Positions 197-31,222 of a stretch of 64,000 bases of DNA are shown here, in pieces (position 1 is the first letter of the stretch; each line of letters starts with the position of its first letter). The notes below the pieces were generated by a model. That model was not told the DNA's origin. It saw only the letters and a program-made list of their open reading frames with translations, and ran no database searches. Both the position numbers and the translations under genes were made by a program. Where the stretch lies: positions 124,001-188,000 of IMG/VR virus record IMGVR_UViG_3300021511_000003, one strand, 5' to 3'.

Positions 197-1483
197 ATGT
201 TAGTTGAGTCGAAACGTGGAATTTGGAGAGAAGACACAATTCAAAGAGATATATTACCAATACCCTCACAAATTATGCGACAATTTGGTATCTCTGCCGA
301 AAATGCAAAACATGTATTGAAATTAGAAGATTTAAGAAAAACACCACCTAATATTATTATTGCTGAAGCAAAAAAGACTTTTGGTTTTATGCAAAATTAT
401 TTCAGTAGACAACAATTAAAAAAGAAACAAAAATATGTAATGGGACTTGGTGTTTTCCAACAACTTTTTAAAGATAGAAAAAATAAAAAAATTAAGTTGT
501 TGAAAGCTACAGTACCAAAATTTAAAAATGTTTATAAGCCATATATTGGTCAGGATATAACTGACAAAACTATTCTTGTATTCCGAACTGGAGGAATAGG
601 TGATCTTCTATTTATTCAACCCAATCTAATATATTTAAAAAACAAATATCCCACATGCAAAATCAAATTTGCCTGTGGTCCGCAATATCAACCTATGGTA
701 AATAATTGGCCTTGTGTTGATGAAGTTTTAGAGTTACCATTCTTATTTAAACATATGATAAAGTCAGATTATCATATGTTATTTGAAGGTGTTATTGAAA
801 GGTGTGAAGAAGCAAGAACGGTAAATTCTTACCATCTTTTTACACGATGGCTTGGGTTAAATTTACCAGATAATTTACTTATCCCAAGACAAGATCCGAA
901 AACAGAACTTATTGATAAATGTTTTAATATATTAACAGAATGGGGGATTGTGAATAAATCATTTGTATTGATGCAGTTACGTGCAAGTTCTCCCATTAGA
1001 ACTCCAACACATGAATTTTGGGTTAAAATTATAGACGAACTGAATGAGAGAGGTCACTATGTTGTTTTAACTGATAGCCCAAGACAATCAGAAAAAATTG
1101 ATGAATTTATTAAAATGTTGAAAAAACCAGAAATGATATTTAACTTTTGTAAACATTCAAAATCTATTGCTTATACAATTGCTCTTACTAAATTAAGTAA
1201 ATGTGTTTACGCTACAGATTCAGCATTGATGCATATTGCTGCATCTATGGATATAAAATGTTTTGGCGTATTCGGGCCATTCCCTGGTTATATTAGATTG
1301 AGTACATATCCTTATGCCTCTTGGGTTGATGCAAAAAGAAAGTGCTCACCATGCTGGATTCATTCACATAAACCTTGTCCACAATCGAAAGATGGTTATA
1401 GTCCCTGTTATGATGAACTTGTAAATACTGATGATAAATTGAAAAAAGTCATTGATAAATTTGAGGATTTATTAAACAGATGA
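197..1483 (+). CDS. Glycosyltransferase family 9 (heptosyltransferase-like)
   Basis: RTGGIGDLLF and DSALMHIAA..GVFGP motifs, C-terminal CSPC cysteine cluster typical of GT9. Confidence 0.85.
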   Translation: MLVESKRGIWREDTIQRDILPIPSQIMRQFGISAENAKHVLKLEDLRKTPPNIIIAEAKKTFGFMQNYFSRQQLKKKQKYVMGLGVFQQLFKDRKNKKIKLLKATVPKFKNVYKPYIGQDITDKTILVFRTGGIGDLLFIQPNLIYLKNKYPTCKIKFACGPQYQPMVNNWPCVDEVLELPFLFKHMIKSDYHMLFEGVIERCEEARTVNSYHLFTRWLGLNLPDNLLIPRQDPKTELIDKCFNILTEWGIVNKSFVLMQLRASSPIRTPTHEFWVKIIDELNERGHYVVLTDSPRQSEKIDEFIKMLKKPEMIFNFCKHSKSIAYTIALTKLSKCVYATDSALMHIAASMDIKCFGVFGPFPGYIRLSTYPYASWVDAKRKCSPCWIHSHKPCPQSKDGYSPCYDELVNTDDKLKKVIDKFEDLLNR

Positions 1484-2430
1484 TTTTATGCGATTATGGG
1501 TGTGGTCGAGAAGCTAAATATCAATTTAAAAATGGTAAATGGTGTTGTAGTAAAAGTAAAAATAGTTGCCCAAAAATGAAGGAATATATGTTTAGAAATA
1601 GAACAGGAAAAAATCATCCTTTATATAATAAAGAACCTTGGAATAAAGGAAAAATAAATATCTATTCTAATATAACACTTCAAAAAATGAAGGAAAATAA
1701 TACTGGTAAAAAATTATCAATTAGTACAAAAGAAAAAATATCTAAATCTTTAAAAAATAGAACCCCTTGGAATAAAGGTAAGACGTATGATGAATTATTT
1801 GGAAGAAAAAAATCTGAAAAATTAAGATTAAAACATAGTATATTTATAAAAAAATTAATCAAAAAAAATAAATATACAACAAATACAATAAGTAAAATTA
1901 AAAATAAATATCCATTATTTTATAAAATTGAAGTAATGAGATATAATCCAAATAAGTCTGTAGAAAAAGAGATTCAAGTACACTGTAAAAATCATAATTG
2001 CCCAAATTCAAAAGAACAAGGTGGTTGGTTTACTCCAACAAAAACTCAACTATATGAACGTATTAGATGTATAGAAAAGAATGGTACTGATAATTCATAT
2101 TTCTATTGTTCTGAAGAATGTAAAAGTGAATGTCCTTTATATAATTCTAAAGGTGGTGATCCATTTAAAGATATTATAAAGCCATATACACAATCTGAAT
2201 ACCAAACTTTTAGAGATTTTGTTTTAAAAAGAGATAATTATAAATGTCAGTATTGTGGTAAAAAAGCAGAACATGTTCATCATGAAAGACCTCAAAAACT
2301 AGAACCATTTTTTGCACTTGATCCTGATCTGACTTGGTCTGTATGTAAAAAGTGTCATTATAAATATGGACATAAAACAAGTACAGAATGTTCAACAGGT
2401 AAATTATCTAATGTTGGTTGTGGAGTTTAA
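1480..2430 (+). mobile_element. Free-standing HNH homing endonuclease with NUMOD3-like repeats
   Basis: N-terminal CDYGCG..KYQFKNGKWCC, PWNKG repeats, C-terminal RDNYKCQYCG..HVHH...CKKCH. Confidence 0.85.
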
Positions 2431-2435
2431 ATAAA

Positions 2436-3272
2436 ATGATTAAAATATTTCTTACAGTAAGAAATAGACTTGCTATAACAAAAAAATGTATTACAGCAAT
2501 TCGAAAACACTCAACACTACCTTATCAACTTTATGTATATAATAATCAAACAAGTTATAAAATTGAAGAACATTTTACATATTTTATGAAATTGTATAAA
2601 AATAAACAGGTTACACAAATTACATTTAACACAGATGCGTCTACATTTAATGCATTTAGTAAAGGTAGTACATGTAATTTTTTTGGCAGGCAACATGAAG
2701 AAGATCCAATGAAGGATAAATATAGTTTTTTAGTAATGCTTGATAATGATATTATCGTAACGCCTGGTTGGGATACAAAATTATTAGCTGCTTGGAAATA
2801 TGTAAATGAAAATAATATTGATAATATTAAAGTAATAGGACAATTACCTGGTGGTATTAAACAAAGAACTGATGTTCTAAAAATAAACCCTGAGTTACAA
2901 GGAAAAAGTGGAAAATTGGGCGGGTCGGGTTTATGGAGTGTTAAACCTAATTTTTTTAGAAATGTTGGTTTTTTAGATTTGAAACTATTAGTTGGTCATA
3001 ATAAAAAACACGATCAATTATATTGGAGGTTATTAGATAGAGCTTCTAAAGGAAAACCATACATTCTTGGTTTAAGAAATAAACTTGGAATACATTGTGG
3101 GAAAATGACAGGGTCGGTCTGTAATAAATTAACTAGAGGTAGAAGTATGGAAATAAATAAAAAACTTAAAACAATTGAATTTGAAAATGCAGATAAAAAA
3201 ATAAATGCTTTAAGTTTTGATGAGTTTTTTAAACTATTAATAAATAATAAAAATTTACAGTCGGATTGGTAA
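2436..3272 (+). CDS. Glycosyltransferase family 2-like
   Basis: N-terminal IFLTVRNRL..TKKCI..YVYNN and LDND (DxD) motif; start moved to ATG 2436. Confidence 0.75.
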   Translation: MIKIFLTVRNRLAITKKCITAIRKHSTLPYQLYVYNNQTSYKIEEHFTYFMKLYKNKQVTQITFNTDASTFNAFSKGSTCNFFGRQHEEDPMKDKYSFLVMLDNDIIVTPGWDTKLLAAWKYVNENNIDNIKVIGQLPGGIKQRTDVLKINPELQGKSGKLGGSGLWSVKPNFFRNVGFLDLKLLVGHNKKHDQLYWRLLDRASKGKPYILGLRNKLGIHCGKMTGSVCNKLTRGRSMEINKKLKTIEFENADKKINALSFDEFFKLLINNKNLQSDW

Positions 3273-3276
3273 CTAT

Positions 3277-4206
3277 ATGGAAAAAGAAAATGCTATTTTG
3301 ATGGGGCCATTTGTAGGTGAGTTGTATTGGGAAGCTGGAAGATTTGCCCCAATGCTTCCAAAAATGTTTAAACAAAATAAAAAAAATCAACCAAAATATA
3401 TAATATTAACTAGATCTGACAGATTTGATTTGTATGGTAAGTTTGCTGATATATTAGTACCTTTAAGAATACCCGGTGATTATAAAGATAAATTTCCAGA
3501 GTGTTTTAGACTTGTTGGTTTTAGTATGGCTGAATATAATAAAATTATAAAAGAGTTTGCACAAAAATATAATGAAAAATATAATATTATAAGACATTTA
3601 TATCCAGATATCAGAAAGGGGAAATTTGTTCAGAAGAATCAATTTTCTAAAAATCAAATGGATTTTACCTTTAGACCAAGAGCTCAAAATTTTCAAATAG
3701 TTAAAAACTATTTACCTACAGATAAACCACTTGTAGTATTAGCTTCTAGATTTAGAAAAGGTTTTAAAAGAAATTGGAATCGTTGGCCTGACTTTTATGA
3801 TCTTATATTTCAAGATGATACTTTAATGAGAGATTTCAATTTTATTATATGCGGTAAGGAAGGAGAATATATTCCTGATAACAAAAATAGATTTTTTGAT
3901 CTAAATCAAATGAAACCAGGAAAGAAATCATCCCTCATTGGTTTATTATTAGTAATATTACAAAACACATTTTTTACATTTGGTTCTCAAAGTGCAATAC
4001 CCAATTTATCATTATTACACAAAGTTGATGTATTAGAATTTGGTTGTCAAAAAATGTATCATACAAGAACATATAATATACACAATAGTCCTATAACTTT
4101 TATTGTGGATAAAAGATATAATATTGCACCAAAACAAATATTTACAAAATTTAAAAGTCTGTTATATCAGAAAAGGAGAATTGAAAATGGCACAACAAAC
4201 AAATAA
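3277..4206 (+). CDS. Putative GT-B-like glycan-modifying protein, paralog of 4416-5180
   Basis: Shares GPFxGELxWE..RFAP and LTRxxRFDLYGxxADILVPLRI with 4416-5180; glycan cluster context. Confidence 0.55.
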   Translation: MEKENAILMGPFVGELYWEAGRFAPMLPKMFKQNKKNQPKYIILTRSDRFDLYGKFADILVPLRIPGDYKDKFPECFRLVGFSMAEYNKIIKEFAQKYNEKYNIIRHLYPDIRKGKFVQKNQFSKNQMDFTFRPRAQNFQIVKNYLPTDKPLVVLASRFRKGFKRNWNRWPDFYDLIFQDDTLMRDFNFIICGKEGEYIPDNKNRFFDLNQMKPGKKSSLIGLLLVILQNTFFTFGSQSAIPNLSLLHKVDVLEFGCQKMYHTRTYNIHNSPITFIVDKRYNIAPKQIFTKFKSLLYQKRRIENGTTNK

Positions 4207-4411: not shown

Positions 4412-4415
4412 ATAA

Positions 4416-5180
4416 ATGAAAGCAAAAGCTTTTTTATTCGGACCATTTATTGGTGAATTATCTTGGGAATTTTTTAGATTTGCCCCTCATGCAATTTACT
4501 TAAAGAAGAAAAATCCGGGGTTGTGTATTATTGTTTTAACTAGAGAATCTCGGTTTGATTTATATGGCCAATATGCTGACATTCTTGTTCCATTGAGAAT
4601 TAAAGATGATTCATCAATGGAAAGAGACTGCTATAAGTTATTGGGTTATAAGGAGGAATATTATAATACACTTGTTAAATATTTTAAAATCAAATTTAGA
4701 AAAAGATATAATATCATAAAACATTATTTTCCGGATATTAGACTTTGGAGATATAAAGTAAAATGGCAAATTCATAGAAATGAAATGAATTATGATTTTA
4801 AACCAAGAAAACCAAATATTGTTATGGCAAATAATGCGATTAATGGTTATATAGGTATAGTTGATAATTTAGAAACAAACGCAAGAACTAATAAAAATAA
4901 TATAATAAAATCAACTACCTTAATTAAAAAACTGCATAAAATAATTGAACCCCAAGCTACACTTATGGGAGGATTGATTGAATCTATTAAAAATGTTAAA
5001 TTTGTAATTGGGACTGTCAATTCTGATATTTCACAATTAGCATTACTATTAGGAATTCCGTTGATTCATATTGGTGAACCAATTACTTTGGATTATGTAA
5101 GTTTAATAAATCCTGGTAAAACACCAGTTATTATTGCCAAAAATATTAATGAAGGAATTAGAATTTATGAAACTATGTGA
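4416..5180 (+). CDS. Putative GT-B-like glycan-modifying protein, paralog of 3277-4206
   Basis: GPFIGELSWEFFRFAPH, RFDLYGQYADILVPLRI. Confidence 0.55.
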   Translation: MKAKAFLFGPFIGELSWEFFRFAPHAIYLKKKNPGLCIIVLTRESRFDLYGQYADILVPLRIKDDSSMERDCYKLLGYKEEYYNTLVKYFKIKFRKRYNIIKHYFPDIRLWRYKVKWQIHRNEMNYDFKPRKPNIVMANNAINGYIGIVDNLETNARTNKNNIIKSTTLIKKLHKIIEPQATLMGGLIESIKNVKFVIGTVNSDISQLALLLGIPLIHIGEPITLDYVSLINPGKTPVIIAKNINEGIRIYETM

Positions 5181-5259
5181 TTATGGGTGTGGTGAAAAGG
5201 CAAATTATGAATTTAAAAATGTGTTACTCAATTACATTTTTAGTAATGGAAAGGTTTAA
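5167..5259 (+). pseudogene. HNH endonuclease N-terminal remnant
   Basis: Encodes MKLCDYGCGEKANYEFKN, matching MILCDYGCGREAKYQFKN of 1480-2430, then stops after 30 aa. Confidence 0.8.
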
Positions 5260-6260
5260 TGACTATGAAAATAATATTTGATTTAAGACGGACTGGGTTA
5301 GGTAATAATGGTGGTTCAATGACATTAATCAGATCGGGTAATGCACTTGTTGATTTGGGTCATAATGTTACATTCATTGATAGTGGAAGGAACCAGCATA
5401 CATGGACTCCATTAAAATCCAAACATATAATATGTAATAGTGATGAAAATATTCCTGATTCTGATTTTATAATCGCTACAGGGTATAAATCGGTTATCCC
5501 AACGGTTCAAGCCCCAAAACGATGTGGTGTTAAAATACATTGGTTAAGAGGTTGGGAAACATGGATTATGCCTGAAAATAGAATAATAGAAACTATTTTA
5601 AAAGCACCAACAATTAAATTGGTGAATAGTATATGTTTACAAAGAAAATTAAAGAGATACGGAGTTGAATCAACAATTATAAGACCTGGTTATGATTTGG
5701 ATGAATTGTATCCAATGAATGTAAGAAATGATCGAAAAATAATAATTCTTGGTGGTCTTTATTCAAAAGGCAAACATTGGAATATTAAACGAACACAGTG
5801 GATTTTTGATGCTTATAATATTTTAAAAAATAAATATGATGTGAAACTATGGATGTTTGGAAATAGTTCAATGTCACATAAAGTTGATAAATATATTCAA
5901 AACCCATCAATTAATCAAAAAAAATATTTTTATAATAATATTAATATTTGGTTAGCGCCAGCTATGCAGGAAGGTTTACATATGCCACCTGCTGAAGCGA
6001 TGATGACCGGATGCCCAGTTGTTGGTACAGAAGCAGATATGTCGGGGATTGAAGATTATTTGGTTCATGGGCGTACTGGTTTTATAGCAGAAAATAATTT
6101 TGAATCATTTTTAGAAAATATTGAAAGATTGATAAATGATGAACCGTTGAGAATATATATGGGTGAATGGTCAAGGGAGATGATAGAACACTTAGGTACA
6201 AGACAATTTAATATGTCAAAACTTATTAAATATTTTATGAGAATTATAAATGATATATAA
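5259..6260 (+). CDS. Glycosyltransferase family 4
   Basis: EGLHMPPAEAMMTGCPVV (Ex7E) motif. Confidence 0.85.
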   Translation: MTMKIIFDLRRTGLGNNGGSMTLIRSGNALVDLGHNVTFIDSGRNQHTWTPLKSKHIICNSDENIPDSDFIIATGYKSVIPTVQAPKRCGVKIHWLRGWETWIMPENRIIETILKAPTIKLVNSICLQRKLKRYGVESTIIRPGYDLDELYPMNVRNDRKIIILGGLYSKGKHWNIKRTQWIFDAYNILKNKYDVKLWMFGNSSMSHKVDKYIQNPSINQKKYFYNNINIWLAPAMQEGLHMPPAEAMMTGCPVVGTEADMSGIEDYLVHGRTGFIAENNFESFLENIERLINDEPLRIYMGEWSREMIEHLGTRQFNMSKLIKYFMRIINDI

Positions 6261-7071
6261 AATAGATGATATTTTGGGGAAATTAGAAAAATGTATAATA
6301 TATAAAATTCCATTTTCACATATCCGGTTTGGTGATGGTGGTATTAAATTTCTTGATGCTATTCTTCGAGGTAATTTTGAACAATTGGAAATTATCATTA
6401 AAAAAGAAGGACTTCCCGCAACAAAAGTTGTTGAAATTTTTGAATTATGGGGTTATTACACAAGGCAAGCTGATTTTATTGATTGTCCTGAAATGTATTT
6501 TGATGATACATTCTGGCCAAGAATTAAAAAAAAAGGAAAATCAATCAATGAAATAACTAAAAGAAAAATGTTACAGTGGCCACAGTTGTATCATGATTCT
6601 GAGTTTGATATTAAAAATTATTGTAATCCAGAATCTAATTATTTAATGACTTTAAGAAGACCTGGAAATAAAAAGAATATTCTTGATTTAATGAAAAATA
6701 GAAAAATTGCTTTAATTACAGCGAAACCAAAAGTTAAAGAATATCTGTCAAAATATTCAATAGATATAATTAAAATTGTGGGTCATTATGAAAATCAATA
6801 TACCAATTCTTATCATGAAGTAATCGATATTATAAAACATCGAGCAACTGAATATGATTTTTGGTTGGTTGCCGCAGGTGAATTAGGACGTATTTATACA
6901 GGTACAATAAAAGAAAATGGTGGTAGAGCCGTTGATATTGGTTATATTGTTGAATTCTGGAGTGGTGAAAGTCTCCATCCGAGATTAACAAGTTTTTTAA
7001 GAAGAAACCCGAATAATAATCTTGAACTACAATTAACAGATGAAGGCATGACTTATATAAAAAATATTTAA
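6250..7071 (+). CDS. GT-D fold glycosyltransferase-like protein
   Basis: FSHIRFGDGG and LVAAG...AVDIG motifs of GT-D (DUF1792-like) domains. Confidence 0.65.
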   Translation: MIYKIDDILGKLEKCIIYKIPFSHIRFGDGGIKFLDAILRGNFEQLEIIIKKEGLPATKVVEIFELWGYYTRQADFIDCPEMYFDDTFWPRIKKKGKSINEITKRKMLQWPQLYHDSEFDIKNYCNPESNYLMTLRRPGNKKNILDLMKNRKIALITAKPKVKEYLSKYSIDIIKIVGHYENQYTNSYHEVIDIIKHRATEYDFWLVAAGELGRIYTGTIKENGGRAVDIGYIVEFWSGESLHPRLTSFLRRNPNNNLELQLTDEGMTYIKNI

Positions 7072-7082
7072 GGGGGAACATT

Positions 7083-7994
7083 TTGCAATTCATATTACCA
7101 GTAGAATCAATTATACAAAATAAAGGTGGTGTGATTTTATATGATCCAATCGCTAATAAAATTCTGAAGCAATATGTTCATGATAAAAAATGGACTCGAG
7201 TTGGATGGCGTGGAGGTAAAGTATATAAAAAATATTTAATTGCAACCGACTGGTCAGATTTACATTATTTTAATATAAAGTCTTGGAAATATGAAAAAAC
7301 ATTTAAAAAGTCAACATTTAATGATCTTCATTATGTTGAAGTATATAATGACAAACTTTATGTAGTTAATACTGGTCTTGATGCAATTGAAATTTTTAAT
7401 ACCCCATTAAACCCACAGTTTGAAAAAATTGAATTCTTATTTGAAAAAAGAGCGGATATTTTTAAACAACGAAACTTTGATTTAAACAAAAACTATAATG
7501 AACTCATGAAAGTGAAACCACATTCATGTCATCCAAATTGTATATCATTTGATAAAAAGAGAATTTTTATTACATGTTTTGGAAAAAACCAAAAACTTAA
7601 TTCAGGAGAAGTTATTGAATTAAATAACAATAAAAAATTATTTAATAGAAGGAATTATGATTGTCATGATGGTATATTTTATAACAATGATTACTATTTA
7701 ACTCATACACGACATGATATTATTCTTGTATATAAGGATTTATATACGAGCAAAATACCAATGGAACCAACTAAAAAAATTAGGATTGGTGGTGGTAAAG
7801 GTTGGTGGAGGGGTATGGTTATTGTTGATGATGTCATATATATATTTGCAAGTGATGGGTACAGAAATAAAAAAACTACAATCAGAATGGCGACAATAAA
7901 TTTAAAAACCAATAAAAAAACAAAAATTAAACTTCCGGTTGTTGATGGTATTCATTGGGATACTATATATCAACCAAATTTTTATGCGGGATAA
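7083..7994 (+). CDS. Hypothetical beta-propeller protein
   Basis: Repeated blade-like motifs (NDLHYV, HPNCI, HDG, WWRG); TTG start with GGGGG RBS. Confidence 0.55.
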   Translation: MQFILPVESIIQNKGGVILYDPIANKILKQYVHDKKWTRVGWRGGKVYKKYLIATDWSDLHYFNIKSWKYEKTFKKSTFNDLHYVEVYNDKLYVVNTGLDAIEIFNTPLNPQFEKIEFLFEKRADIFKQRNFDLNKNYNELMKVKPHSCHPNCISFDKKRIFITCFGKNQKLNSGEVIELNNNKKLFNRRNYDCHDGIFYNNDYYLTHTRHDIILVYKDLYTSKIPMEPTKKIRIGGGKGWWRGMVIVDDVIYIFASDGYRNKKTTIRMATINLKTNKKTKIKLPVVDGIHWDTIYQPNFYAG

Positions 7995-7996
7995 AT

Positions 7997-22085: not shown

Positions 22086-22097
22086 GAAAATTTTATT

Positions 22098-22859: not shown

Positions 22860-23467
22860 TGAAGTATATTATTGATACAGCATTTCAACCAGATATTAAT
22901 ATATGGAAAGATCATGTCGTGGGTGTTACAAGTAATCCAATCCTTTTACATAACTCAAGAATAACTGCTGTTAATTTTTTTATTAATAATAGACATCTAT
23001 TCAATAATGTTTTTGTACAGGTTAATTCACAAAAAGATATTGATGAATTACTTACAGTGGATTTAAATAGAAATAGGATAATCTTTAAAGTTCCTCTTGT
23101 ATTAAAACATGAATTTAATGGATATAAAATGCTACAATATTTAATCAATAAAGGATATAGAACATGCGCAACTATTGTTTATGATATTGAGCAGTTTGAT
23201 TATGCATGTGAAATTGGATCGGAGTTCAGTATTGTATTATATGCTAAAAATTCCAATAATTTTATAATGAGTCAATGTTGTAATTTAAAACGAAAAATGG
23301 GTTATAAAACCAAAATTATTGCAGCAAGTTTCAGATATGCTGATCATGTATTTGACTGTATAAAAGCTGGTGTTGATTATGCTACAGTACCACCAAAAAT
23401 TATGGAGAAAATATTTCATAATAAAAAAGCAATTGATGAATACAATAGATTTTACGGGATTGAATAA
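22859..23467 (+). CDS. Transaldolase / fructose-6-phosphate aldolase family
   Basis: IDTA, GVTSNP, FKVP, IIAASFR, TVPP. Confidence 0.88.
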   Translation: MKYIIDTAFQPDINIWKDHVVGVTSNPILLHNSRITAVNFFINNRHLFNNVFVQVNSQKDIDELLTVDLNRNRIIFKVPLVLKHEFNGYKMLQYLINKGYRTCATIVYDIEQFDYACEIGSEFSIVLYAKNSNNFIMSQCCNLKRKMGYKTKIIAASFRYADHVFDCIKAGVDYATVPPKIMEKIFHNKKAIDEYNRFYGIE

Positions 23468-24198
23468 TGAAAACAGTTGCTATTATATCAACAAGATTAA
23501 CTTCACAACGATTTCCTAATAAATTAATTCAAATATTTAATGGGAAAAGAATAATAGATCATGTAATTCAAAACACAAAAAAATTAGATTTTGTTGATGA
23601 TATTATAATTGGAAGTAATGATAATCAGTTTGCTCAGCAGTTATGCAAGAGCTATAAATTTATAAAGAGTAGTCATACATCTGAAGCAACTTGTGGAAGT
23701 CAGAGAGCGTATAACTTTTATTTAACTGATCCTAGTTATGATTTTTATATGTCTGTACCTGCTGATGAACCAGCAATTAATCCAATTGAAGTGAATAAAG
23801 TTTTTAATAAAAAGACACAGTTTAATACAGATGAAATTATAACTTTTTACACAAAATTTTATTGTAATAGAGATCTGACCAGTCATTTATCTTGTAAAAT
23901 AGTTTCTGATGATAAAAACTTTATGATTTATAATTCAAGAGCTGTAGTACCTGTAAATAAAGATGGCACATATTTGAATTTGGAACAATATAAAAAACAT
24001 GTTGGTTTATTTGTTTTTCCGAGAGAAGTATTTACCAAACACGGTAATCTTTGGGAAAACACAACTGATATTGAATCTCTTGAGCAAAATAAATTTATGC
24101 AGAGTTTTGTACATGTTAGATTAGTTGAAATGAATCATATTGGTTTTGGTATTGATACACCAGACCAAATAAAACAATTAGAAAGTAGGTTAAAATGA
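23467..24198 (+). CDS. kdsB: CMP-KDO synthetase (cytidylyltransferase)
   Basis: RLTSQRFPNK, GSQR, DEP, SR..VP, KHVG, ESLEQ, IDTPD. Confidence 0.85.
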   Translation: MKTVAIISTRLTSQRFPNKLIQIFNGKRIIDHVIQNTKKLDFVDDIIIGSNDNQFAQQLCKSYKFIKSSHTSEATCGSQRAYNFYLTDPSYDFYMSVPADEPAINPIEVNKVFNKKTQFNTDEIITFYTKFYCNRDLTSHLSCKIVSDDKNFMIYNSRAVVPVNKDGTYLNLEQYKKHVGLFVFPREVFTKHGNLWENTTDIESLEQNKFMQSFVHVRLVEMNHIGFGIDTPDQIKQLESRLK

Positions 24199-24584: not shown

Positions 24585-24666
24585 GAACAAAATTTAAATA
24601 AGATAGGAGAGTTATGTGGTTTTTTGTATATGAAAAATTAATGCCTGATTTGAAAGAGAGTAAATA

Positions 24667-25403: not shown

Positions 25404-25413
25404 AAAGGTAAAA

Positions 25414-25890: not shown

Positions 25891-25895
25891 TTAAT

Positions 25896-26741
25896 ATGAA
25901 ATATAAAATTGGTATTATTGGTTTTGGTTTTTTGGGGCGTGCCTTAGCACATGGTTTTGTGTTGCATGCTGATATTAAAATTTATGATAAATATGAAAAT
26001 AAATTTGATACACTTGAAGAAACTGTCAATGAATCAGATTTTATTTTTGTTGGTGTACCTACACCAATGAATGATGATGGTTCACAGAATTTATCTAATA
26101 TATATGATGCTATAAAAAATATTAATTCTGTTGCTACAACTAATAAGATAATTATTTTGAGAAGTACAATCATACCTGGAACAACTAGGAGTATTGCAAA
26201 AATATATCCAAATCATGATTTTGTTTTCTTCCCTGAATTTTTAACTGAAAGAACAGCAAAATTAGATTTTATTAATCCAGCTCGTTTGATTTTTGGTGGT
26301 GATGAAATAGTCATAGCAAGAATTGTTGAATTATTTCGATTAAGATTTACATATACTCCTATATTTCAAACCACATGGGAAGCAGCAGAGGTATCAAAAT
26401 ATATGGTTAATTGTTTCTTTGCTGTTAAGATTTCATTTTTAAATGAATTATATGATATTGCTGAAAGAATTGGAGTTGAATATAATGATCTAAGAGATAT
26501 GTGGCTTGCTGATTGTAGAATTGGTAATAGTCATGCAGATATCCCTGGACATGATAATCATAGAGGGTATGGGGGGAAGTGTTTTCCGAAAGATGTGAAA
26601 GCATTTGTTAATTGGGCAGAGGAACATAATTTGAATGTGGATATGTGTAAAGCAGCGGATAATGTTAATGAAAGAGTAAGAAAAGAAAAAGATTGGTTTA
26701 ATATTAAAGGAGCTACAACAAAAAATTTATATGAAAGGTAG
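25896..26741 (+). CDS. ugd: UDP-glucose/GDP-mannose dehydrogenase family (short form, no C-terminal domain)
   Basis: GFGFLG, VPTP, RSTIIPG, PEFL, GYGGKCFPKD. Confidence 0.88.
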   Translation: MKYKIGIIGFGFLGRALAHGFVLHADIKIYDKYENKFDTLEETVNESDFIFVGVPTPMNDDGSQNLSNIYDAIKNINSVATTNKIIILRSTIIPGTTRSIAKIYPNHDFVFFPEFLTERTAKLDFINPARLIFGGDEIVIARIVELFRLRFTYTPIFQTTWEAAEVSKYMVNCFFAVKISFLNELYDIAERIGVEYNDLRDMWLADCRIGNSHADIPGHDNHRGYGGKCFPKDVKAFVNWAEEHNLNVDMCKAADNVNERVRKEKDWFNIKGATTKNLYER

Positions 26742-27231: not shown

Positions 27232-27270
27232 GAACAAATATATGACTTACAAATTAAGTGAGGAAAAAAA

Positions 27271-27477: not shown

Positions 27478-27490
27478 TTTATTTTTATGT

Positions 27491-27524
27491 AAAAAAATCC
27501 GCCCAGTTATAGGCAGGATTTTTT
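27491..27524. terminator. Bidirectional intrinsic terminator
   Basis: AAAAAAATCCGCC-loop-GGCAGGATTTTTT between convergent genes. Confidence 0.7.
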
Positions 27525-27531
27525 ATTTCAT

Positions 27532-29825: not shown

Positions 29826-29849
29826 AAAGTTAAATAATCAGGAGTAAAA

Positions 29850-30314
29850 ATGTGTTATGCGAGACGATTTGTATTTGAAAATTTTTTACGATTAAAAACA
29901 GATAATATTTTAGAGGAGAATGAAACACCAATGATTGTAGTCGATAAGAGTTGGGGATGGGAAAAATGGTTTGCTGACAATAGTTTATATTTTGGTAAAT
30001 GTTTATATGTTAAAAAAGGTAAATGGTCTTCTTTTGGTAATTTTCATTATCATAAAATCAAAGATGAAACTTTTTTTGTTATTTCAGGTAAGCTACATCT
30101 TGAGTATGTAATTGAAACAGAAAAAGAAATGGAAATTTTAACTTTGATTTTAAATAAGGGTGACTCTTTTAGAGTAAAACCGGGTGTGAAACATAGATTT
30201 ACATCGACTAGTTTTCTCGGTTGTAAATTTATTGAAGCATCTACCACACATAGGGATGAAGATTCATATAGATGTTATTGGGATGAGAATGGGAATAAAT
30301 GGGTTCTAGTATAG
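29850..30314 (+). CDS. Cupin (sugar isomerase-like)
   Basis: KSWGWE, HYHKIKDETF, PGVKHRF, EAST.H.DEDSYR. Confidence 0.8.
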   Translation: MCYARRFVFENFLRLKTDNILEENETPMIVVDKSWGWEKWFADNSLYFGKCLYVKKGKWSSFGNFHYHKIKDETFFVISGKLHLEYVIETEKEMEILTLILNKGDSFRVKPGVKHRFTSTSFLGCKFIEASTTHRDEDSYRCYWDENGNKWVLV

Positions 30315-30721
30315 TATTTACAAATGGGTGTTTTGATGTTTTTCATTATGGTCATCTGCATTTACTGAAAGAAGCCAAAAAATTTGCTGATTTTTTAATT
30401 GTTGGTATAAACAATGATGAATCAATTAGACATTTAAAAGGTGTTGGGCGTCCGATATTTCCTTTGAAGTATAGAATGGCAATATTATCATCATTAATTT
30501 ATGTAGATGAAGTCATACCTTTTAAAGATGACACACCACTTAAACTTATCAGAATAATAAAGCCTGATATTTTAGTAAAAGGTGGGGATTGGAAAGTTGA
30601 TGATATTGTTGGGGCTACTTATGTGATGAAACATGGTGGGAAAGTCAAAACAATACCATTCATTGAAGGATTTTCTTCAACTAAAATATTACAAAATAAA
30701 CAATATGAAAAAAATATATAA
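30299..30721 (+). CDS. rfaE2: Heptose-1-phosphate adenylyltransferase (RfaE domain II / HldC)
   Basis: VFTNGCFDVFHYGH, LKG..RP, PDILVKGGDW, GFSST. Confidence 0.9.
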   Translation: MGSSIVFTNGCFDVFHYGHLHLLKEAKKFADFLIVGINNDESIRHLKGVGRPIFPLKYRMAILSSLIYVDEVIPFKDDTPLKLIRIIKPDILVKGGDWKVDDIVGATYVMKHGGKVKTIPFIEGFSSTKILQNKQYEKNI

Positions 30722-30923
30722 ACGAAGAATATATTGGTTTAGTACAATAAAGGCTTGTGGTGCTGTGGCTGTTGATCAGAATGGTTTTGTTTATAATCTT
30801 GATACAGCACCAATTTTTAGGTGGATGGTAGGTAAAAAATTTGTAGTGATGAAAAACTTTTTAAGAAGTAAAAATCAATTCATTGGATGTAAAAAAATAG
30901 GTGAGGAGGTTGATCCATTCTGA
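30705..30923 (+). CDS. Hypothetical protein
   Basis: 72 aa, coupled to neighbours; APIFRW..GK. Confidence 0.55.
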   Translation: MKKIYKRRIYWFSTIKACGAVAVDQNGFVYNLDTAPIFRWMVGKKFVVMKNFLRSKNQFIGCKKIGEEVDPF

Positions 30924-31222
30924 TGATTTATTGTATTGATGTAGATGGAACAATATGTAATGAAACATGGGATGTTGGATATAAATATGCCAAACCAAAT
31001 CAGAAGATGGTTGATAAAATTAATCGTCTTTATGAGGAAGGACATACAATAAAAATATTTACAGCAAGGGGTCAAGTAACTGGTATTGATCACGAGCAAT
31101 TTACTAAAGATCAATTAAAGAAATGGGGTGTAAAATATCATGAATATCATAAAAAAACTCCTGGTGATTTTTATATAGATGATAAAGCAGTTACACCTGA
31201 AAAATTTTTAATAGGAGAATAA
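30923..31222 (+). CDS. Minimal HAD phosphatase (capsule-biosynthesis type)
   Basis: IDVDGTIC, FTARG, YIDDKA. Confidence 0.85.
   Translation: MIYCIDVDGTICNETWDVGYKYAKPNQKMVDKINRLYEEGHTIKIFTARGQVTGIDHEQFTKDQLKKWGVKYHEYHKKTPGDFYIDDKAVTPEKFLIGE

What the first reader, a model, noticed from the sequence alone, without database searches (positions are those of the whole stretch)
197..31222. Phage pathway for an LPS-like, sulfated or sulfoquinovosylated glycan
Seen: a GT9 heptosyltransferase-like gene, GT2, GT4 and GT-D enzymes, two clear and two possible sulfotransferases, SqdB, KdsA, KdsB, HldC-like adenylyltransferase, Ugd, transaldolase, a HAD phosphatase and a cupin. Established: KdsA/B make CMP-KDO, HldC makes ADP-heptose, SqdB makes UDP-sulfoquinovose. 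Inference: the phage either glycosylates its virion with an anionic LPS-core mimic or remodels the host surface. Having KDO, heptose and sulfoquinovose genes together in one virus is unusual.
Basis: partly seen in the sequence, partly recalled or inferred. Interest (0 to 1): 0.62.

Follow-up and report, generated by a model that had tools for sequence, protein, structure and literature searches.

The report
Jumbo phage acidic-glycan gene cluster
A 31-kb block of a hydrothermal-vent jumbo phage does encode enzymes for three unusual activated sugars (Kdo, heptose, sulfoquinovose) plus about nine glycosyltransferases and several sulfotransferases; it is a richer, sulfur-decorated version of the 'LPS gene clusters' known from cyanophages, and which molecule receives the sugars (virion, host envelope or phage DNA) is still open.

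Summary
Window 197-31222 carries an SQD1-type UDP-sulfoquinovose synthase, KdsA, KdsB, an HldC-type adenylyltransferase, a cupin and a small HAD phosphatase. It also carries a divergent FSA/Tal-like aldolase, a truncated Ugd-like gene and two clear sulfotransferases. Two further P-loop proteins could be sulfotransferases or kinases. There are 8-9 soluble glycosyltransferases: three GT9-like, two GT4, one GT-D, one GT8-like and one weak GT2.

The contig is viral. It is a 223-kb, about 71% complete jumbo myovirus from vent and sediment metagenomes, with tail sheath, baseplate, terminase and its own RNA polymerase genes. An HldA-like heptose kinase lies 46 kb upstream. The cluster is collinear, at 46-76% amino-acid identity, in 302-304-kb relatives. 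That makes it a conserved lineage trait, not a cellular island.

Kdo and heptose genes are already known in cyanophages, and the cupin/HldC/HAD trio is a cyanophage module. SqdB, the sulfotransferases and the GT9-like genes have no match in 50,697 GenBank phages.

The acceptor is unresolved. I slightly favour O-glycosylation of a virion protein, because the genome encodes a collagen-like Ser/Thr-rich fibre. Host LPS-core remodelling and glycan hypermodification of DNA are serious rivals. I class it as a new variant of a known kind.

The parts
197..1483 (+). GT9-like glycosyltransferase (428 aa). It has an N-terminal extension and a conserved C-terminal CxxC...C...C/HSH motif.
   Evidence: PF01075 38.9 bits. 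Only 43 bits to WaaF-type equivalogs, cut-off 134.6. Weak match to WaaF 1PSW. The Cys motif is conserved in relative L041.
1480..2430 (+). NUMOD3 homing endonuclease inserted between two GT genes. It is not part of the pathway.
   Evidence: PF07460. At least 12 paralogs in the genome. Absent at this position in relative L041.
2418..3272 (+). Possible GT2-like glycosyltransferase (weak).
   Evidence: PF00535 17.6 bits, below cut-off. 60% identical ortholog in L041.
3277..4206 (+). GT9-like glycosyltransferase.
   Evidence: Atlas feature score 0.98, 216/256 shared, viral 'GT9 heptosyltransferase family' clusters. 62% identical ortholog in L041. No Pfam hit.
4416..5180 (+). Paralog of 3277-4206 (GT9-like).
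   Evidence: 32% identity over 255 aa, E 2e-35.
5259..6260 (+). GT4 glycosyltransferase.
   Evidence: PF13692 58 bits, PF00534 50 bits. Orthologs in L010 and L041.
6250..7071 (+). GT-D-fold glycosyltransferase.
   Evidence: PF22882 39.4 bits. Orthologs in L011, L035 and L041.
7083..7994 (+). Conserved protein of unknown function inside the GT block.
   Evidence: No family hit in Pfam, NCBIfam or PHROGs. 68% identical ortholog in L041.
7955..8764 (+). PAPS-type sulfotransferase.
   Evidence: PF00685 71 bits, PF13469 54 bits. KxGTS and RNPxDRxxS motifs visible. No match in GenBank phages.
8752..9546 (+). GT8-like retaining GT-A glycosyltransferase and candidate sulfoquinovosyltransferase.
   Evidence: Atlas 0.98 'nucleotide-diphospho-sugar transferase'. 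Invariant HxDxD. AF2 pLDDT 77. Foldseek top hits are GT8 glycogenin, XXYLT1, GlyE and LgtC, E 4e-8 to 2e-6. Lies next to SqdB in L010 and near it in L011 and L041.
9738..10892 (+). UDP-sulfoquinovose synthase (SqdB/SQD1 type).
   Evidence: NF041015 363.6 bits over the full length. SQD1 1QRR 228 bits, with the catalytic T and YHxxK kept. 57-67% identical copies in 7 IMG/VR contigs and 4 low-GC 'MAG' contigs.
10897..11481 (+). SAM-dependent methyltransferase.
   Evidence: PF13489 39 bits. An ortholog sits in the same block of L041.
11485..12144 (+). PAPS-type sulfotransferase.
   Evidence: PF13469 60 bits, PF00685 37 bits. Orthologs in L034, L035 and L041.
12534..13957 (+). Two proteins of unknown role: 12534-13229 (weak Prim-Pol-like hit) and 13229-13957 (weak YaeF-type permuted-papain hit). 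Only the first has orthologs in relatives.
   Evidence: Sub-threshold hits only. 12534-13229 is 58-62% identical in L034, L035 and L041; 13229-13957 gave no match there.
14015..14935 (+). Papain-family (C1) cysteine peptidase, conserved within the cluster.
   Evidence: PF00112 66.6 bits. 52-54% identical orthologs at the same position in L034, L035 and L041.
14967..15998 (+). GT4 glycosyltransferase.
   Evidence: PF00534 34 bits. 54-55% identical orthologs in L034, L035 and L041. No match in GenBank phages.
19651..20454 (+). KdsA, Kdo-8-phosphate synthase.
   Evidence: NF003543 212.5 bits (cut-off 242), TIGR01362 201.7 bits, DAHP synthase models at most 51 bits. 76% identical in L034 and L041. 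Absent from L035.
20447..21358 (+). Radical-SAM/SPASM enzyme, always paired with the P-loop protein.
   Evidence: PF04055 and PF13186. 67-73% identical in L034, L035 and L036, always directly upstream of the P-loop gene.
21345..22859 (+). Tandem paralogs (21345-22085 and 22098-22859): P-loop proteins with a sulfotransferase-or-kinase fold.
22859..23467 (+). Divergent FSA/TalC-like class I aldolase. Its stop overlaps the KdsB start.
   Evidence: PF00923 54.7 bits. TIGR00875 51 bits. Present with KdsA and KdsB in L034 and L041, and lost together with them in L035.
23467..24198 (+). KdsB, CMP-Kdo synthetase.
   Evidence: NF003952 130 bits, NF009905 129 bits; next family PseF at 31 bits. 62% identical in L034.
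25896..26741 (+). Truncated nucleotide-sugar dehydrogenase (Ugd-like), specific to this genome.
   Evidence: TIGR03026 178 bits covering model positions 70-297 of 413. No C-terminal domain anywhere in the contig. GxGxxG and GGKCFPKD kept. Absent from L034 and L035.
29850..30314 (+). Cupin of the cyanophage 'cysteine dioxygenase'-annotated family. It overlaps the HldC start.
   Evidence: PF07883 35.5 bits. 41% identical to P-TIM68 gp194. Matches 35 cyanophage and marine-virus records, in the rows shown next to a nucleotidyltransferase or small HAD gene.
30299..30721 (+). [quoted passage not shown]
   Evidence: TIGR02199 179.7 bits (cut-off 181.5); TagD model 59 bits. HxGH motif. 40-54% identical in cyanophages and huge phages.
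30923..31222 (+). Small cap-less HAD phosphatase (EcbF/BcbF type). Candidate sugar-phosphate phosphatase in a GmhB or KdsC role.
   Evidence: TIGR01689 27 bits, HAD-IIIA. PDB 9IQW 'capsule biosynthesis protein' E 1.4e-11, 1XPJ E 0.006. 44% identical to cyanophage genes annotated 'phosphoheptose isomerase'.

Best explanation
The block is a conserved, phage-encoded, purely cytoplasmic glycan-assembly toolkit of a vent/sediment jumbo myovirus.

Shown by sequence:
- The phage carries the committed enzymes for three activated acidic or unusual sugars.
- UDP-sulfoquinovose: SqdB, with a GT8-like transferase beside it.
- CMP-Kdo: KdsA and KdsB, with an FSA/Tal-like aldolase that is gained and lost together with them.
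- ADP-heptose: HldC, a small HAD phosphatase and a cupin, plus an HldA-like kinase elsewhere in the genome.
- It also carries 8-9 soluble glycosyltransferases (three GT9-like, two GT4, GT-D, GT8-like, and possibly GT2), at least two PAPS-type sulfotransferases and an O-methyltransferase-type enzyme.

Inferred:
- The host supplies UDP-glucose, sulfite, PAPS, arabinose-5-P or sedoheptulose-7-P isomerase activity, and CTP/ATP.
- The phage enzymes then build a heptose/Kdo/sulfoquinovose-containing, sulfated and methylated oligosaccharide.

My committed reading of the acceptor, held only slightly ahead of its rivals: the glycan is attached in the cytoplasm to a phage structural protein before or during assembly. 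This would be O-glycosylation of a Ser/Thr-rich fibre or capsid decoration, giving the virion a strongly anionic coat that resembles bacterial surface glycans.
For: Phage identity: tail sheath, baseplate wedge, TerL, RNAP beta/beta' and SbcC/topo II lie on the same 223-kb contig. It is an IMG/VR record, 71% complete.

Enzyme identities.

Conservation:
- The whole block is collinear at 46-76% aa identity in contigs of 302 and 304 kb from other samples.
- Near-identical DNA occurs in at least 6 runs.
- Stable gene content over this divergence suits a phage-intrinsic structure better than the polymorphic host-surface clusters described for cyanophages (PMC7824862).

No membrane step:
- No protein in 197-31222 has more than one hydrophobic segment.
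- No WaaA (GT30) was found, and the family scans of the cluster returned no flippase, polymerase or ligase.

The family mix matches protein O-glycosylation systems:
- GT4, GT-D and GT8 are the families used on bacterial serine-rich-repeat adhesins. GlyE is among the fold hits of 8752-9546.
- From memory, GT9-like enzymes heptosylate autotransporters.

Candidate acceptor: a fibre-like ORF at G000:C1:221223-223015 ends in at least 29 collagen-like G-(S/T)-S triplets and matches collagens and BclA.

In other viral contigs SqdB sits among GT4, GT2, methyltransferase, radical-SAM and sulfotransferase genes, and in two of them directly beside the endolysin.
Against: - No direct evidence links any GT to a protein acceptor.
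- The collagen-like ORF is 35 kb from the window's end (about 67 kb from the cluster's end), is cut by the contig end, and was not checked in relatives.
- Kdo is not a known protein-linked sugar in bacteria.
- The Kdo + heptose + GT9 + GT4 + GT8 set equally mirrors an LPS core (waa) locus, whose enzymes are also soluble or peripheral.
- The Kdo and heptose genes are interleaved with nucleotide-metabolism genes, and heptose and Kdo on phage DNA have been demonstrated experimentally elsewhere.
- Several enzymes score below NCBIfam equivalog cut-offs, so substrates could differ.
- Expression timing is unknown; no RNA run holds the sequence.
Confidence: 0.33

Rival explanations
1. Host envelope remodelling. 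The toolkit acts at the cytoplasmic face of the inner membrane on the host's lipid A-Kdo or another lipid-linked acceptor. It builds an alternative, sulfated LPS/LOS-core-type oligosaccharide, which host MsbA/Lpt machinery exports. This masks receptors, giving superinfection exclusion or less loss of progeny on debris.
For: - Kdo, heptose, three GT9-like genes, GT4 and GT8 is the family composition of waa core loci.
- LPS core transferases are also soluble or peripheral, so the lack of TM proteins is compatible.
- The cupin/HldC/HAD trio and a PfkB kinase are shared with the cyanophage 'LPS/CPS' clusters, for which this role was proposed (PMC1079782; PMC7824862).
- The host is probably Gram-negative: OmpA-domain protein, GH108 endolysin, tmRNA.
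Against: - No WaaA-type Kdo transferase, lipid A gene, ligase or flippase was found in the 71% of the genome held.
- The cluster is highly conserved and collinear between diverged relatives. Surface-masking clusters are expected to be polymorphic.
- The cyanophage hypothesis has itself never been tested.
- GT9-like scores are far below the WaaC/F/Q equivalog cut-offs.
Confidence: 0.25
2. DNA glycan hypermodification. The phage replaces thymidine by 5-hydroxymethyl-dU, made by its ThyA homolog from dUMP that the dCMP deaminase supplies. At least the heptose and/or Kdo modules, with one or more of the GT-B/GT-A enzymes, then glycosylate that base in DNA to evade restriction and other nucleases. 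The larger GT/sulfotransferase block may or may not belong to this.
For: Experimental precedent:
- Phage clusters of a HAD/kinase, a PF01467-type cytidylyltransferase and a GT-B put mono- and di-heptose on 5hmC. Another GT puts Kdo on it. Those GTs resemble LPS enzymes (bioRxiv 10.1101/2023.12.21.572611).
- RB69 and DLP3 use MazG, a dNMP kinase, GT4-like enzymes, a small 1XPJ-like HAD and a ThyA homolog (PMC13326640).

In this window:
- KdsA/KdsB and cupin/HldC/HAD are interleaved with QueC, MazG, dCMP deaminase, a DatZ-like dNTPase, and SLOG/NDT-like genes.
- The small HAD matches 1XPJ.
- The only ThyA homolog (61536-62339) has Asp at the E. coli L143 position, with D169 and N177 kept. That is a hydroxymethylase-like, dUMP-type signature (criteria from PMC13326640). 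No ThyX was found.
- The P-loop paralogs have a true Walker A motif and could be nucleotide or DNA kinases.
- Strong conservation fits a core DNA-protection trait.
Against: - Eight to nine GTs, PAPS sulfotransferases and a sulfonated sugar on already anionic DNA would be unprecedented, and the added negative charge should make packaging harder (my inference).
- The GT next to SqdB is GT8-like, not of the TarP/JGT or T4 beta-GT types reported for DNA GTs.
- The ThyA homolog is 30 kb from the cluster, not adjacent.
- The same cupin/HldC/HAD module is in T4-like cyanophages, which from memory are not known to have hydroxymethylated DNA.
- No GT here matched any GenBank phage DNA GT.
Confidence: 0.2
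3. There is no single product. The genes are independent auxiliary metabolic genes that merely boost host pools (CMP-Kdo, ADP-heptose, UDP-SQ for sulfolipid) or act on unrelated substrates, for example sulfotransferases acting on small molecules. They are clustered only because phage accessory genes accumulate in one region.
For: - The Kdo module can be lost on its own (L035).
- The Ugd-like and FG-GAP genes are genome-specific insertions.
- Pathways are incomplete: no SIS isomerase, APS kinase or HldD.
- Many scores lie under equivalog cut-offs.
Against: - Nine GTs without a product make little sense.
- SqdB is repeatedly next to a GT8-like gene and inside GT/sulfotransferase/methyltransferase blocks in unrelated viral contigs.
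- The cluster has tight, overlapping, same-strand gene packing, and its collinearity is preserved across relatives.
- Three GT9-like genes accompany a heptose activation pathway.
Confidence: 0.1
4. Cellular island or chimeric assembly: the glycan block is bacterial DNA mis-joined to phage DNA.
For: - The enzymes are of cellular type.
- SqdB-like genes also appear in contigs binned to bacterial and archaeal MAGs.
Against: - The block is flanked on both sides by phage genes on one contig with uniform GC of about 28-30%.
- The same junctions and order occur in independent 302- and 304-kb contigs and a 34-kb contig from other samples.
- At least 6 runs hold 71-100% of the sampled words of 5001-15000.
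- The 'MAG' contigs are short and low-GC, come from incompatible phyla, and two of those MAGs also hold TerL homologs. They are therefore mis-binned phage.
Confidence: 0.02

Closest known systems
Cyanophage 'LPS / capsular polysaccharide' gene clusters (P-SSM2, P-TIM68, S-SM2, S-CAM1; Sullivan et al. 2005, PMC1079782; Iyer et al. 2021, PMC7824862)
   Same: - Large lytic myoviruses with SDR enzymes, a PfkB kinase, a HIGH-type nucleotidyltransferase, a cupin, a small HAD and several GT families.
- The cupin (41% identity), HldC-like (40-45%) and small HAD (about 44%) are direct homologs with conserved adjacency.
   Different: - The host and habitat are not cyanobacterial; the phage comes from vents and sediments.
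- The backbone is only about 27-30% identical in TerL and PolB.
- It adds SqdB, PAPS sulfotransferases, three GT9-like genes and KdsA/KdsB.
- The cluster is conserved rather than polymorphic among relatives.
- No SIS-type isomerase was found.
Synechococcus phage S-SCSM2R cell-wall synthesis and modification genes (PMC12801897)
   Same: KdsA and KdsB are adjacent in a jumbo phage with 13 GTs, a Ugd and a sulfotransferase annotation nearby. Its KdsA is 32% identical to the window's.
   Different: It has no SqdB, GT9-like or heptose-module linkage at that locus. Its genome context is photosynthesis genes. Here the KdsA-KdsB pair is split by a radical-SAM enzyme, two P-loop genes and an aldolase.
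Phage DNA glycan-hypermodification gene clusters (bioRxiv 10.1101/2023.12.21.572611; RB69/DLP3 arabinosyl-5hoC, PMC13326640)
   Same: - Same enzyme kinds: MazG, small HAD, PF01467 nucleotidyltransferase, kinase, GT-B/GT-A transferases, ThyA homolog.
- Heptose and Kdo were shown as DNA adducts.
- The GTs resemble LPS enzymes.
   Different: - Those clusters have 1-3 GTs adjacent to the ThyS or 5mYOX gene.
- None has SqdB or sulfotransferases.
- Homology of the window's GTs to those DNA GTs was not shown.
Giant-virus glycosylation machineries (Mimivirus fibril glycans; CroV Kdo pathway), recalled from memory and not tested here
   Same: Virus-encoded nucleotide-sugar synthesis plus many GTs, used to glycosylate the virion independently of the host. 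CroV carries a Kdo pathway.
   Different: Those are eukaryotic viruses. No sequence relationship was tested here.
Bacterial sqdB-sqdD / plant SQD1 sulfolipid pathway
   Same: SQD1-type synthase with the conserved catalytic T/Y-H-x-x-K, followed by a GT8 (glycogenin-like) transferase. From memory, Rhodobacter SqdD is also of this type.
   Different: There is no sign of a diacylglycerol acceptor or membrane association. The synthase is embedded in a multi-GT/sulfotransferase block. The phage clade is only about 41% identical to the nearest clearly cellular (Bathyarchaeia) genes found.

Membership tests
UDP-sulfoquinovose synthase (SqdB/SQD1/Agl3) | Full-length homology to characterised SQD1, and best match among SDR families | tested here: met
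   1QRR 228 bits, E 1.9e-66, residues 2-347. The next family, UXS, scores 51 bits. NF041015 is matched 1-384/384.
UDP-sulfoquinovose synthase (SqdB/SQD1/Agl3) | Catalytic Thr and Tyr-His-x-x-Lys (the His is SQD1-specific; from memory of the SQD1 structure papers) | tested here: met
   The alignment to 1QRR shows GT(T/M)GEY and S(I/F)YH(C/L)SK aligned. These residues are invariant in 8 viral copies.
UDP-sulfoquinovose synthase (SqdB/SQD1/Agl3) | Score above NCBIfam equivalog cut-off | tested here: not met
   363.6 bits against a cut-off of 575. It is a divergent viral clade, so activity must be assayed.
Kdo-8-phosphate synthase (KdsA) | Matches KDO8PS models rather than DAHP synthase or NeuB | tested here: met
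   212.5 and 201.7 bits to KDO8PS, at most 51 bits to DAHPS.
Kdo-8-phosphate synthase (KdsA) | Score above equivalog cut-off | tested here: not met
   212.5 bits against 242 (NF003543), and 201.7 against 314 (TIGR01362).
CMP-Kdo synthetase (KdsB) | Best match to KdsB among CMP-sugar synthetases; above cut-off | tested here: inconclusive
   130 bits full length to the KdsB subfamily, against 31 bits for PseF. The cut-offs are 193-255.
Complete Kdo pathway (KdsD-KdsA-KdsC-KdsB) | Arabinose-5-P isomerase (SIS) and Kdo-8-P phosphatase present | tested here: not met
   There is no SIS domain in the 223-kb fragment; the best hit is 11.9 bits. Only small generic HADs are present. The FSA/Tal-like aldolase co-varies with KdsA/KdsB and could supply arabinose-5-P (FSA chemistry used in PMC9947464), but this is untested.
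ADP-heptose pathway (GmhA-HldA-GmhB-HldC-HldD) | HldC-type adenylyltransferase with HxGH | tested here: met
   TIGR02199 179.7 bits (cut-off 181.5, marginally below). TagD scores 59 bits. HYGH motif present.
ADP-heptose pathway (GmhA-HldA-GmhB-HldC-HldD) | HldA-type heptose-7-P kinase | tested here: met
   G000:C1:77591-78508(-): TIGR02198 250 bits (cut-off 345), with ribokinase next at 54 bits. It lies outside the window.
ADP-heptose pathway (GmhA-HldA-GmhB-HldC-HldD) | GmhA isomerase and HldD epimerase | tested here: not met
   No SIS domain. No heptose-epimerase match apart from a weak SqdB cross-hit. The fragment is only 71% complete.
GT9 LPS heptosyltransferases (WaaC/WaaF/WaaQ) | PF01075 domain above gathering score | tested here: met
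   197-1483 scores 38.9 bits against 22. 3277-4206 and 4416-5180 are GT9-like only by Atlas features.
GT9 LPS heptosyltransferases (WaaC/WaaF/WaaQ) | Equivalog-level similarity to heptosyltransferase I, II or III | tested here: not met
   The best is 43 bits against a cut-off of 134.6. These are GT9-superfamily members, not WaaC/F/Q orthologs.
LPS core (waa) assembly system | Kdo transferase WaaA (GT30) and a link to lipid A | tested here: not met
   PF04413 was not found, and the family scans of the cluster returned no lipid A genes. The host enzyme could serve instead.
PAPS-dependent sulfotransferases | Sulfotransfer_1/3 domain above cut-off, with 5'-PSB and 3'-PB motifs | tested here: met
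   7955-8764 scores 71 and 54 bits; 11485-12144 scores 60 and 37 bits. Motifs are seen. PAPS must come from the host, since no APS kinase was found.
PAPS-dependent sulfotransferases | The same features, for the P-loop paralogs 21345-22085 and 22098-22859 | tested here: inconclusive
GT8 retaining glycosyltransferases (for 8752-9546) | GT-A fold with DxD; closest structures are GT8 | tested here: met
   Invariant HxDxD. Foldseek prob 1.0, E 4e-8 to glycogenin, also XXYLT1, LARGE1, GlyE and LgtC. TM-scores are only 0.4-0.5 and model pLDDT is 77.
Phage DNA glycan-hypermodification cluster | ThyA-homolog hydroxymethylase or hydroxylase (or 5mYOX) in the genome | tested here: met
   61536-62339: PF00303 38.6 bits. 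The catalytic PPC is present, Asp sits at the L143 position, and D169 and N177 are kept. It is the only ThyA homolog, and there is no ThyX. Its product was not assayed.
Phage DNA glycan-hypermodification cluster | A GT homologous to known DNA GTs (T4 alpha/beta-GT, JGT/TarP-like, RB69 Aat), adjacent to the base-modifying enzyme | tested here: not met
   GT4 14967-15998, GT8-like 8752-9546 and GT9-like 3277-4206 have no tblastn match in 50,697 phage records. The ThyA homolog is 30 kb away. The remaining GTs were not tested.
Cyanophage-type LPS/CPS cluster | Homologous cupin + HIGH nucleotidyltransferase + small HAD (+ PfkB kinase) module with GTs | tested here: met

The most novel reading that the evidence does not exclude
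At least part of this toolkit glycosylates the phage's own DNA. A predicted 5-hydroxymethyl-dU, made by the hydroxymethylase-like ThyA homolog, would be decorated with heptose and/or Kdo. In the extreme version it would also carry sulfoquinovose or sulfate, giving the first sulfonated or sulfated nucleic acid and the most complex DNA glycan known.
Probability: 0.15. Interest if true: 0.9.

Novelty: new variant of a known kind. Interest (0 to 1): 0.55.

Why it matters
Phage-encoded glycan clusters have been known since P-SSM2 in 2005, but their products and targets have never been determined.

This lineage offers an unusually complete and conserved case. It carries three self-encoded activated sugars, one of them a sulfonated sugar otherwise tied to photosynthetic membranes and archaeal N-glycans. 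It also carries sulfotransferases and nine GTs, in a non-photosynthetic vent/sediment jumbo phage. This has three consequences:

- It extends viral sulfur-related auxiliary metabolism beyond cysH/dsr-type genes to organosulfur glycans.
- It gives a tractable set of enzymes for testing which macromolecule phages glycosylate. SqdB with its GT8 partner, and HldA/HldC with the GT9-like genes, could be expressed in E. coli.
- It bears on three questions: how virions behave on charged mineral and mucus surfaces, how receptors are masked, and how far DNA glycan hypermodification extends.

Tried and rejected
- Cellular island or chimera: rejected.
- Host identification by tmRNA: blastn of the phage tmRNA against 151 genomes of the class of the Arcobacter-labelled MAG found nothing. 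That is uninformative. The tag ending in AKAA resembles Campylobacterota tags only from memory. The host remains unknown.
- Single-sequence scans of IMG/VR with KdsA and with the P-loop protein found no relatives. Relatives were reached instead through the protein word search and exact-protein look-ups.
- PHROGs gave nothing for ten unknowns in the cluster. NCBIfam gave nothing for 7083-7994, 4416-5180, 21345-22085, 22098-22859 and 2418-3272.
- Foldseek on the P-loop model could not separate kinases from sulfotransferases. VIA-wide leaned towards sulfotransferases without settling it.
- Sequence search did not link the GT9-like 197-1483 to the autotransporter heptosyltransferases; only WaaF matched.
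- Timing the cluster by promoter motifs failed. A T[AT]AGAACA[AT]A motif (33 sites) and a CTATATAT motif precede many genes, but no temporal class could be assigned. No motif lies inside 197-12144.
- Family searches of the contig for SIS, APS kinase, WaaA, the Ugd C-terminal domain, ThyX and TGT/DpdA were all negative. The fragment is only 71% complete, so absence is not proven.
- The 302-304-kb relatives are not held as searchable records.
- Read laying and complex prediction were not used. One PDB search of the collagen-like fibre ORF listed animal and human collagen chains among its matches; none of those sequences was saved, compared or searched further.

Full report
**What the window is.** The 64-kb window is bases 124,001-188,000 of a single 223,015-bp contig with 30% G+C. 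The tools identify the contig as an IMG/VR virus record, linear, with a CheckV completeness of 71%.

Outside the window the same contig encodes a tail sheath, a baseplate wedge protein and a large terminase. It also encodes two multisubunit-RNA-polymerase beta/beta'-like proteins, an SbcC-like nuclease and topoisomerase II. The terminase and the family-B polymerase are only 27-30% identical to the nearest GenBank phages, which are Flavobacterium phage immuto and T4-like cyanophages and pelagiphages.

Near-identical DNA is present in at least six sequencing runs labelled hydrothermal vent, marine sediment or sediment metagenome. This is therefore a novel jumbo myovirus lineage from vents and sediments.

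**Checking the observation.** The strongest assignments are these:

- **SqdB (9738-10892).** It gives a full-length match to the UDP-sulfoquinovose synthase model. It scores 228 bits against the crystal-structure sequence of Arabidopsis SQD1, with the catalytic Thr and Tyr-His-x-x-Lys aligned.
- **KdsA (19651-20454).** 212 bits to Kdo-8-P synthase, against at most 51 bits to DAHP synthases.
- **KdsB (23467-24198).** 130 bits, against 31 bits for the next CMP-sugar synthetase.
- **HldC (30299-30721).** 179.7 bits with a cut-off of 181.5, and an HxGH motif.
- **Sulfotransferases (7955-8764, 11485-12144).** Both are well over the Pfam cut-offs.

- The GT2 is below cut-off.
- The 'Ugd' keeps its Rossmann motif and catalytic cysteine but lacks the entire C-terminal domain, which is nowhere in the contig. 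It is also absent from relatives.
- The 'transaldolase' is a very divergent FSA/TalC-like aldolase.
- The HAD is a 99-residue cap-less phosphatase.

New in this stage:

- 3277-4206 and its paralog 4416-5180 are GT9-like.
- 8752-9546 is a GT-A enzyme with an invariant HxDxD. Its model best matches GT8 enzymes: glycogenin, XXYLT1, GlyE and LgtC.
- An HldA-type heptose-7-phosphate kinase lies 46 kb upstream of the window.
- The NUMOD3 gene at 1480-2430 is one of at least 12 homing-endonuclease paralogs and is an insertion.

**Anatomy.** The region has three parts.

- **(A) 197-15998.** A tightly packed glycan block, in this order: GT9-like, [endonuclease], GT2-like, two GT9-like, GT4, GT-D, a conserved unknown, sulfotransferase, GT8-like, SqdB, methyltransferase, sulfotransferase, two unknown proteins (the first conserved in relatives), a papain-family peptidase and GT4.
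- **(B) 17323-27231.** A nucleotide-metabolism block holding QueC, MazG, dCMP deaminase, a SLOG domain, DUF7768, an NDT-like gene and a DatZ-like dNTPase. Set into it are KdsA, a radical-SAM/SPASM enzyme, the P-loop pair, the FSA/Tal-like aldolase and KdsB.
- **(C) 29850-31222.** Cupin, HldC and HAD, ending at a GH108 endolysin.

No protein in the region has more than one hydrophobic segment. The family scans of the cluster returned no flippase, polymerase or ligase, and a contig-wide search found no Kdo transferase. The 10 kb upstream contains no glycan genes.

**Relatives.** The P-loop protein has only four homologs in the 5.8-billion-protein collection. Following them led to contigs of 302,134 and 304,386 bp and one of 34 kb, all from other samples.

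These contigs are collinear with window 197-32771 at 46-76% amino-acid identity, gene for gene. Their size agrees with the 71% completeness estimate. The cluster is thus a conserved trait of the lineage.

There is informative variation. The 34-kb relative lacks KdsA, the aldolase and KdsB together, but keeps the radical-SAM/P-loop pair. This ties the aldolase functionally to Kdo synthesis. FSA-type aldolases can make arabinose-5-phosphate from glycolaldehyde and glyceraldehyde-3-P, chemistry that is used in PMC9947464. The same variation shows that the radical-SAM/P-loop pair is a separate module.

SqdB itself forms a viral clade:

- Seven IMG/VR contigs carry copies at 58-66% identity.
- Four short low-GC contigs binned into MAGs of incompatible phyla carry copies at 57-67% identity. 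Two of those MAGs also contain TerL homologs, so these contigs are mis-binned phage.
- The best clearly cellular matches found were about 41% identical, from Bathyarchaeia. That scan was pattern-limited.

Across 128 neighbouring ORFs of these contigs the commonest families are methyltransferases, radical-SAM enzymes, GT4, GT2, Polysacc_synt_2 SDRs and sulfotransferases. The GT8-like gene is next to SqdB in L010 and close to it in L011.

**Comparison with what is known.**

- In 50,697 GenBank phage records, SqdB has no true homolog.
- The sulfotransferase 7955-8764, the GT9-like 3277-4206, the GT4 14967-15998 and the GT8-like gene have no match at all.
- KdsA matches four records. One is cyanophage S-SCSM2R, whose authors reported kdsA and kdsB as new for cyanophages (PMC12801897).
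- HldC-like genes occur in 134 records and the cupin in 35, mostly T4-like cyanophages. In the cyanophage loci examined, the cupin, the nucleotidyltransferase and the small HAD sit together with a PfkB kinase, epimerases and a GT.
- In those cyanophage records, genes annotated 'phosphoheptose isomerase' (about 110 aa in P-TIM68) are homologs of the small HAD.
- This is the 'LPS gene cluster' of Sullivan et al. 2005 (PMC1079782) and the 'capsular polysaccharide modification system' of Iyer et al. 2021 (PMC7824862). Its product has never been determined.
- A putative viral UDP-sulfoquinovose synthase was noted once, in a Mu-like contig from the Cariaco Basin (PMC7785012).

**Mechanism.** The sequences show that the phage encodes the committed steps to UDP-sulfoquinovose, CMP-Kdo and ADP-heptose. 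They also show enough soluble transferases, sulfotransferases and a methyltransferase to build a complex acidic oligosaccharide. It is my inference that these genes work on one product, and that the host supplies UDP-glucose, sulfite, PAPS and the missing isomerases. No SIS domain and no APS kinase were found in the fragment.

The acceptor cannot be read from the sequence. I weigh three candidates.

*(i) A virion protein, 0.33.*

- The cluster is conserved and collinear over large divergence, which fits a phage-intrinsic structure.
- There is no membrane step.
- GT4, GT-D and GT8 are the families that O-glycosylate serine-rich-repeat adhesins.
- From memory, GT9-like enzymes heptosylate autotransporters. 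The 197-1483 protein has a conserved C-terminal four-cysteine motif that recalls their iron finger, but sequence search did not link them.
- The genome encodes a fibre-like protein ending in at least 29 collagen-like Gly-(Ser/Thr)-Ser triplets, which matches collagens and BclA. It is a natural O-glycosylation substrate. It is cut by the contig end, and I did not check it in relatives.

*(ii) Host LPS/LOS core, 0.25.*

- Kdo, heptose, GT9, GT4 and GT8 is the make-up of waa loci, and those enzymes are also peripheral.
- There is no WaaA, the GT9-like proteins are far from WaaC/F/Q, and the strong conservation is unlike surface-masking clusters.

*(iii) Phage DNA, 0.20.*

- Recent work shows that phage GTs resembling LPS enzymes put heptose on hydroxymethylcytosine, using a HAD/kinase, a PF01467 nucleotidyltransferase and a GT-B. 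Another GT puts Kdo on it.
- RB69-type arabinosylation uses MazG, a kinase, a small 1XPJ-like HAD, GT4-like enzymes and a ThyA homolog.
- Here the Kdo and heptose genes sit among nucleotide-metabolism genes, and the small HAD matches 1XPJ.
- The only ThyA homolog (61536-62339) has Asp at the position of E. coli L143, with D169 and N177 retained. By the criteria quoted in PMC13326640 this suggests a dUMP hydroxymethylase.
- Against this reading: nine GTs, sulfotransferases and a sulfonated sugar on DNA would be unprecedented. The transferase beside SqdB is GT8-like. The same heptose module occurs in cyanophages, which from memory are not known to have hydroxymethylated DNA.

A mixed solution remains possible, in which modules B and C serve DNA and block A serves a protein or lipid. 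It would, however, leave the three GT9-like genes of block A without their nearby ADP-heptose source.

**Verdict.** The phage origin is confirmed.

The finding is a new variant of a known kind, the phage-encoded surface-glycan ('LPS') cluster. It is distinguished by SqdB with a GT8 partner, PAPS sulfotransferases, three GT9-like genes and a Kdo module, all in a conserved block of a non-cyanobacterial jumbo phage lineage.

Interest is moderate to high (0.55). The gene combination is new and testable, but the target, which is the interesting part, is unresolved.

Noticed in passing
window 32688-52028 (- strand): A dense array of 23-25 tRNA genes plus a full-length tmRNA (43085-43470; Rfam 137.8 bits; tag ADDYYTDFAKAA) and a tRNA with anticodon CTA (44062-44133), i.e. 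an amber suppressor. TAG ends 25 of 277 crude ORFs, so partial TAG read-through or recoding is possible.
   Followed up: partly
window 56653-59877 (+): The family-B DNA polymerase carries an N-terminal uracil-DNA-glycosylase-superfamily domain (residues 32-178), making a UDG-PolB fusion.
   Followed up: no
window 61536-62339 (+); also 17323-19307, 26731-27231, 60125-60847: There are signs of hypermodified DNA. The only ThyA homolog has Asp at the E. coli L143 position with N177 kept, which is dUMP-hydroxymethylase-like. The genome also has dCMP deaminase, MazG, a DatZ-like dATP/dGTP diphosphohydrolase domain, QueC and a QueE-like radical-SAM enzyme. No TGT/DpdA and no ThyX were found in the contig.
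   Followed up: partly
window 1480-2430 and at least 12 other places in G000:C1 (e.g. 24086-25024, 97721-98734, 117712-118719, 196323-197252): An expanded family of NUMOD3 homing endonucleases, 31-70% identical to one another. One copy is inserted between two glycosyltransferase genes and is absent at that site in a relative.
   Followed up: partly
L007:7447-8490 (G000:C1:122447-123490), just upstream of the window: A 347-aa protein matches Pfam Volactin, an archaeal-type actin homolog, at 248.5 bits over its full length. This is a phage-encoded actin-like protein directly upstream of the glycan block.
   Followed up: no
L009:16223-18015 (G000:C1:221223-223015, contig end): A fibre-like ORF whose C-terminus is at least 29 collagen-like G-(S/T)-S triplets running into the contig end. 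It matches collagens and Bacillus BclA. It is a candidate O-glycosylation acceptor and the probable cause of the assembly break.
   Followed up: partly
L002:11964-14966 and L002:15637-18348 (- strand): Multisubunit RNA-polymerase beta/beta'-like genes of the kind seen in phiKZ- and AR9-type jumbo phages, here in a phage with a T4-like terminase and PolB.
   Followed up: no
whole contig; e.g. window 56624, 24582, 27229: The motif T[AT]AGAACA[AT]A occurs 33 times, mostly 20-100 nt upstream of start codons (PolB and others). A second motif, CTATATAT[AT], precedes other genes. These are candidate phage promoters of two classes.
   Followed up: partly
window 33688-37560, 52043-53308: An RNA repair and translation set (HD phosphohydrolase, RNA ligase, RlaP nucleotidyltransferase, CCA-adding enzyme) and an NAPRTase for NAD salvage. 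Relatives also carry RF-1-domain and PTH2 genes (L034).
   Followed up: no
L032:6751-7089 (P-TIM68 gp195) and the cyanophage records: Cyanophage genes annotated 'phosphoheptose isomerase' (about 110 aa in P-TIM68) are homologs (about 44% identity) of the small HAD phosphatase, not SIS-type GmhA. This looks like a propagated mis-annotation.
   Followed up: partly
L018, L019, L020, L021 (MAG contigs labelled Parcubacteria, Woesearchaeota, WOR-3, Arcobacter): Short low-GC contigs carrying the viral SqdB clade are binned into MAGs of unrelated phyla. Two of these MAGs also hold TerL homologs on other short contigs. This looks like phage contamination of the bins.
   Followed up: partly
window 25896-28713: The truncated Ugd-like gene and an oppositely oriented FG-GAP-repeat protein with an N-terminal hydrophobic segment are absent from both relatives examined. 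This is a genome-specific insertion inside the conserved block.
   Followed up: partly
window 1370-1480 (C-terminus of 197-1483): A CxxC-x8-C-x10-C motif with an HSH triplet sits at the C-terminus of the GT9-like protein and is conserved in relative L041. It is a probable metal site and recalls, from memory, the iron finger of autotransporter heptosyltransferases.
   Followed up: partly
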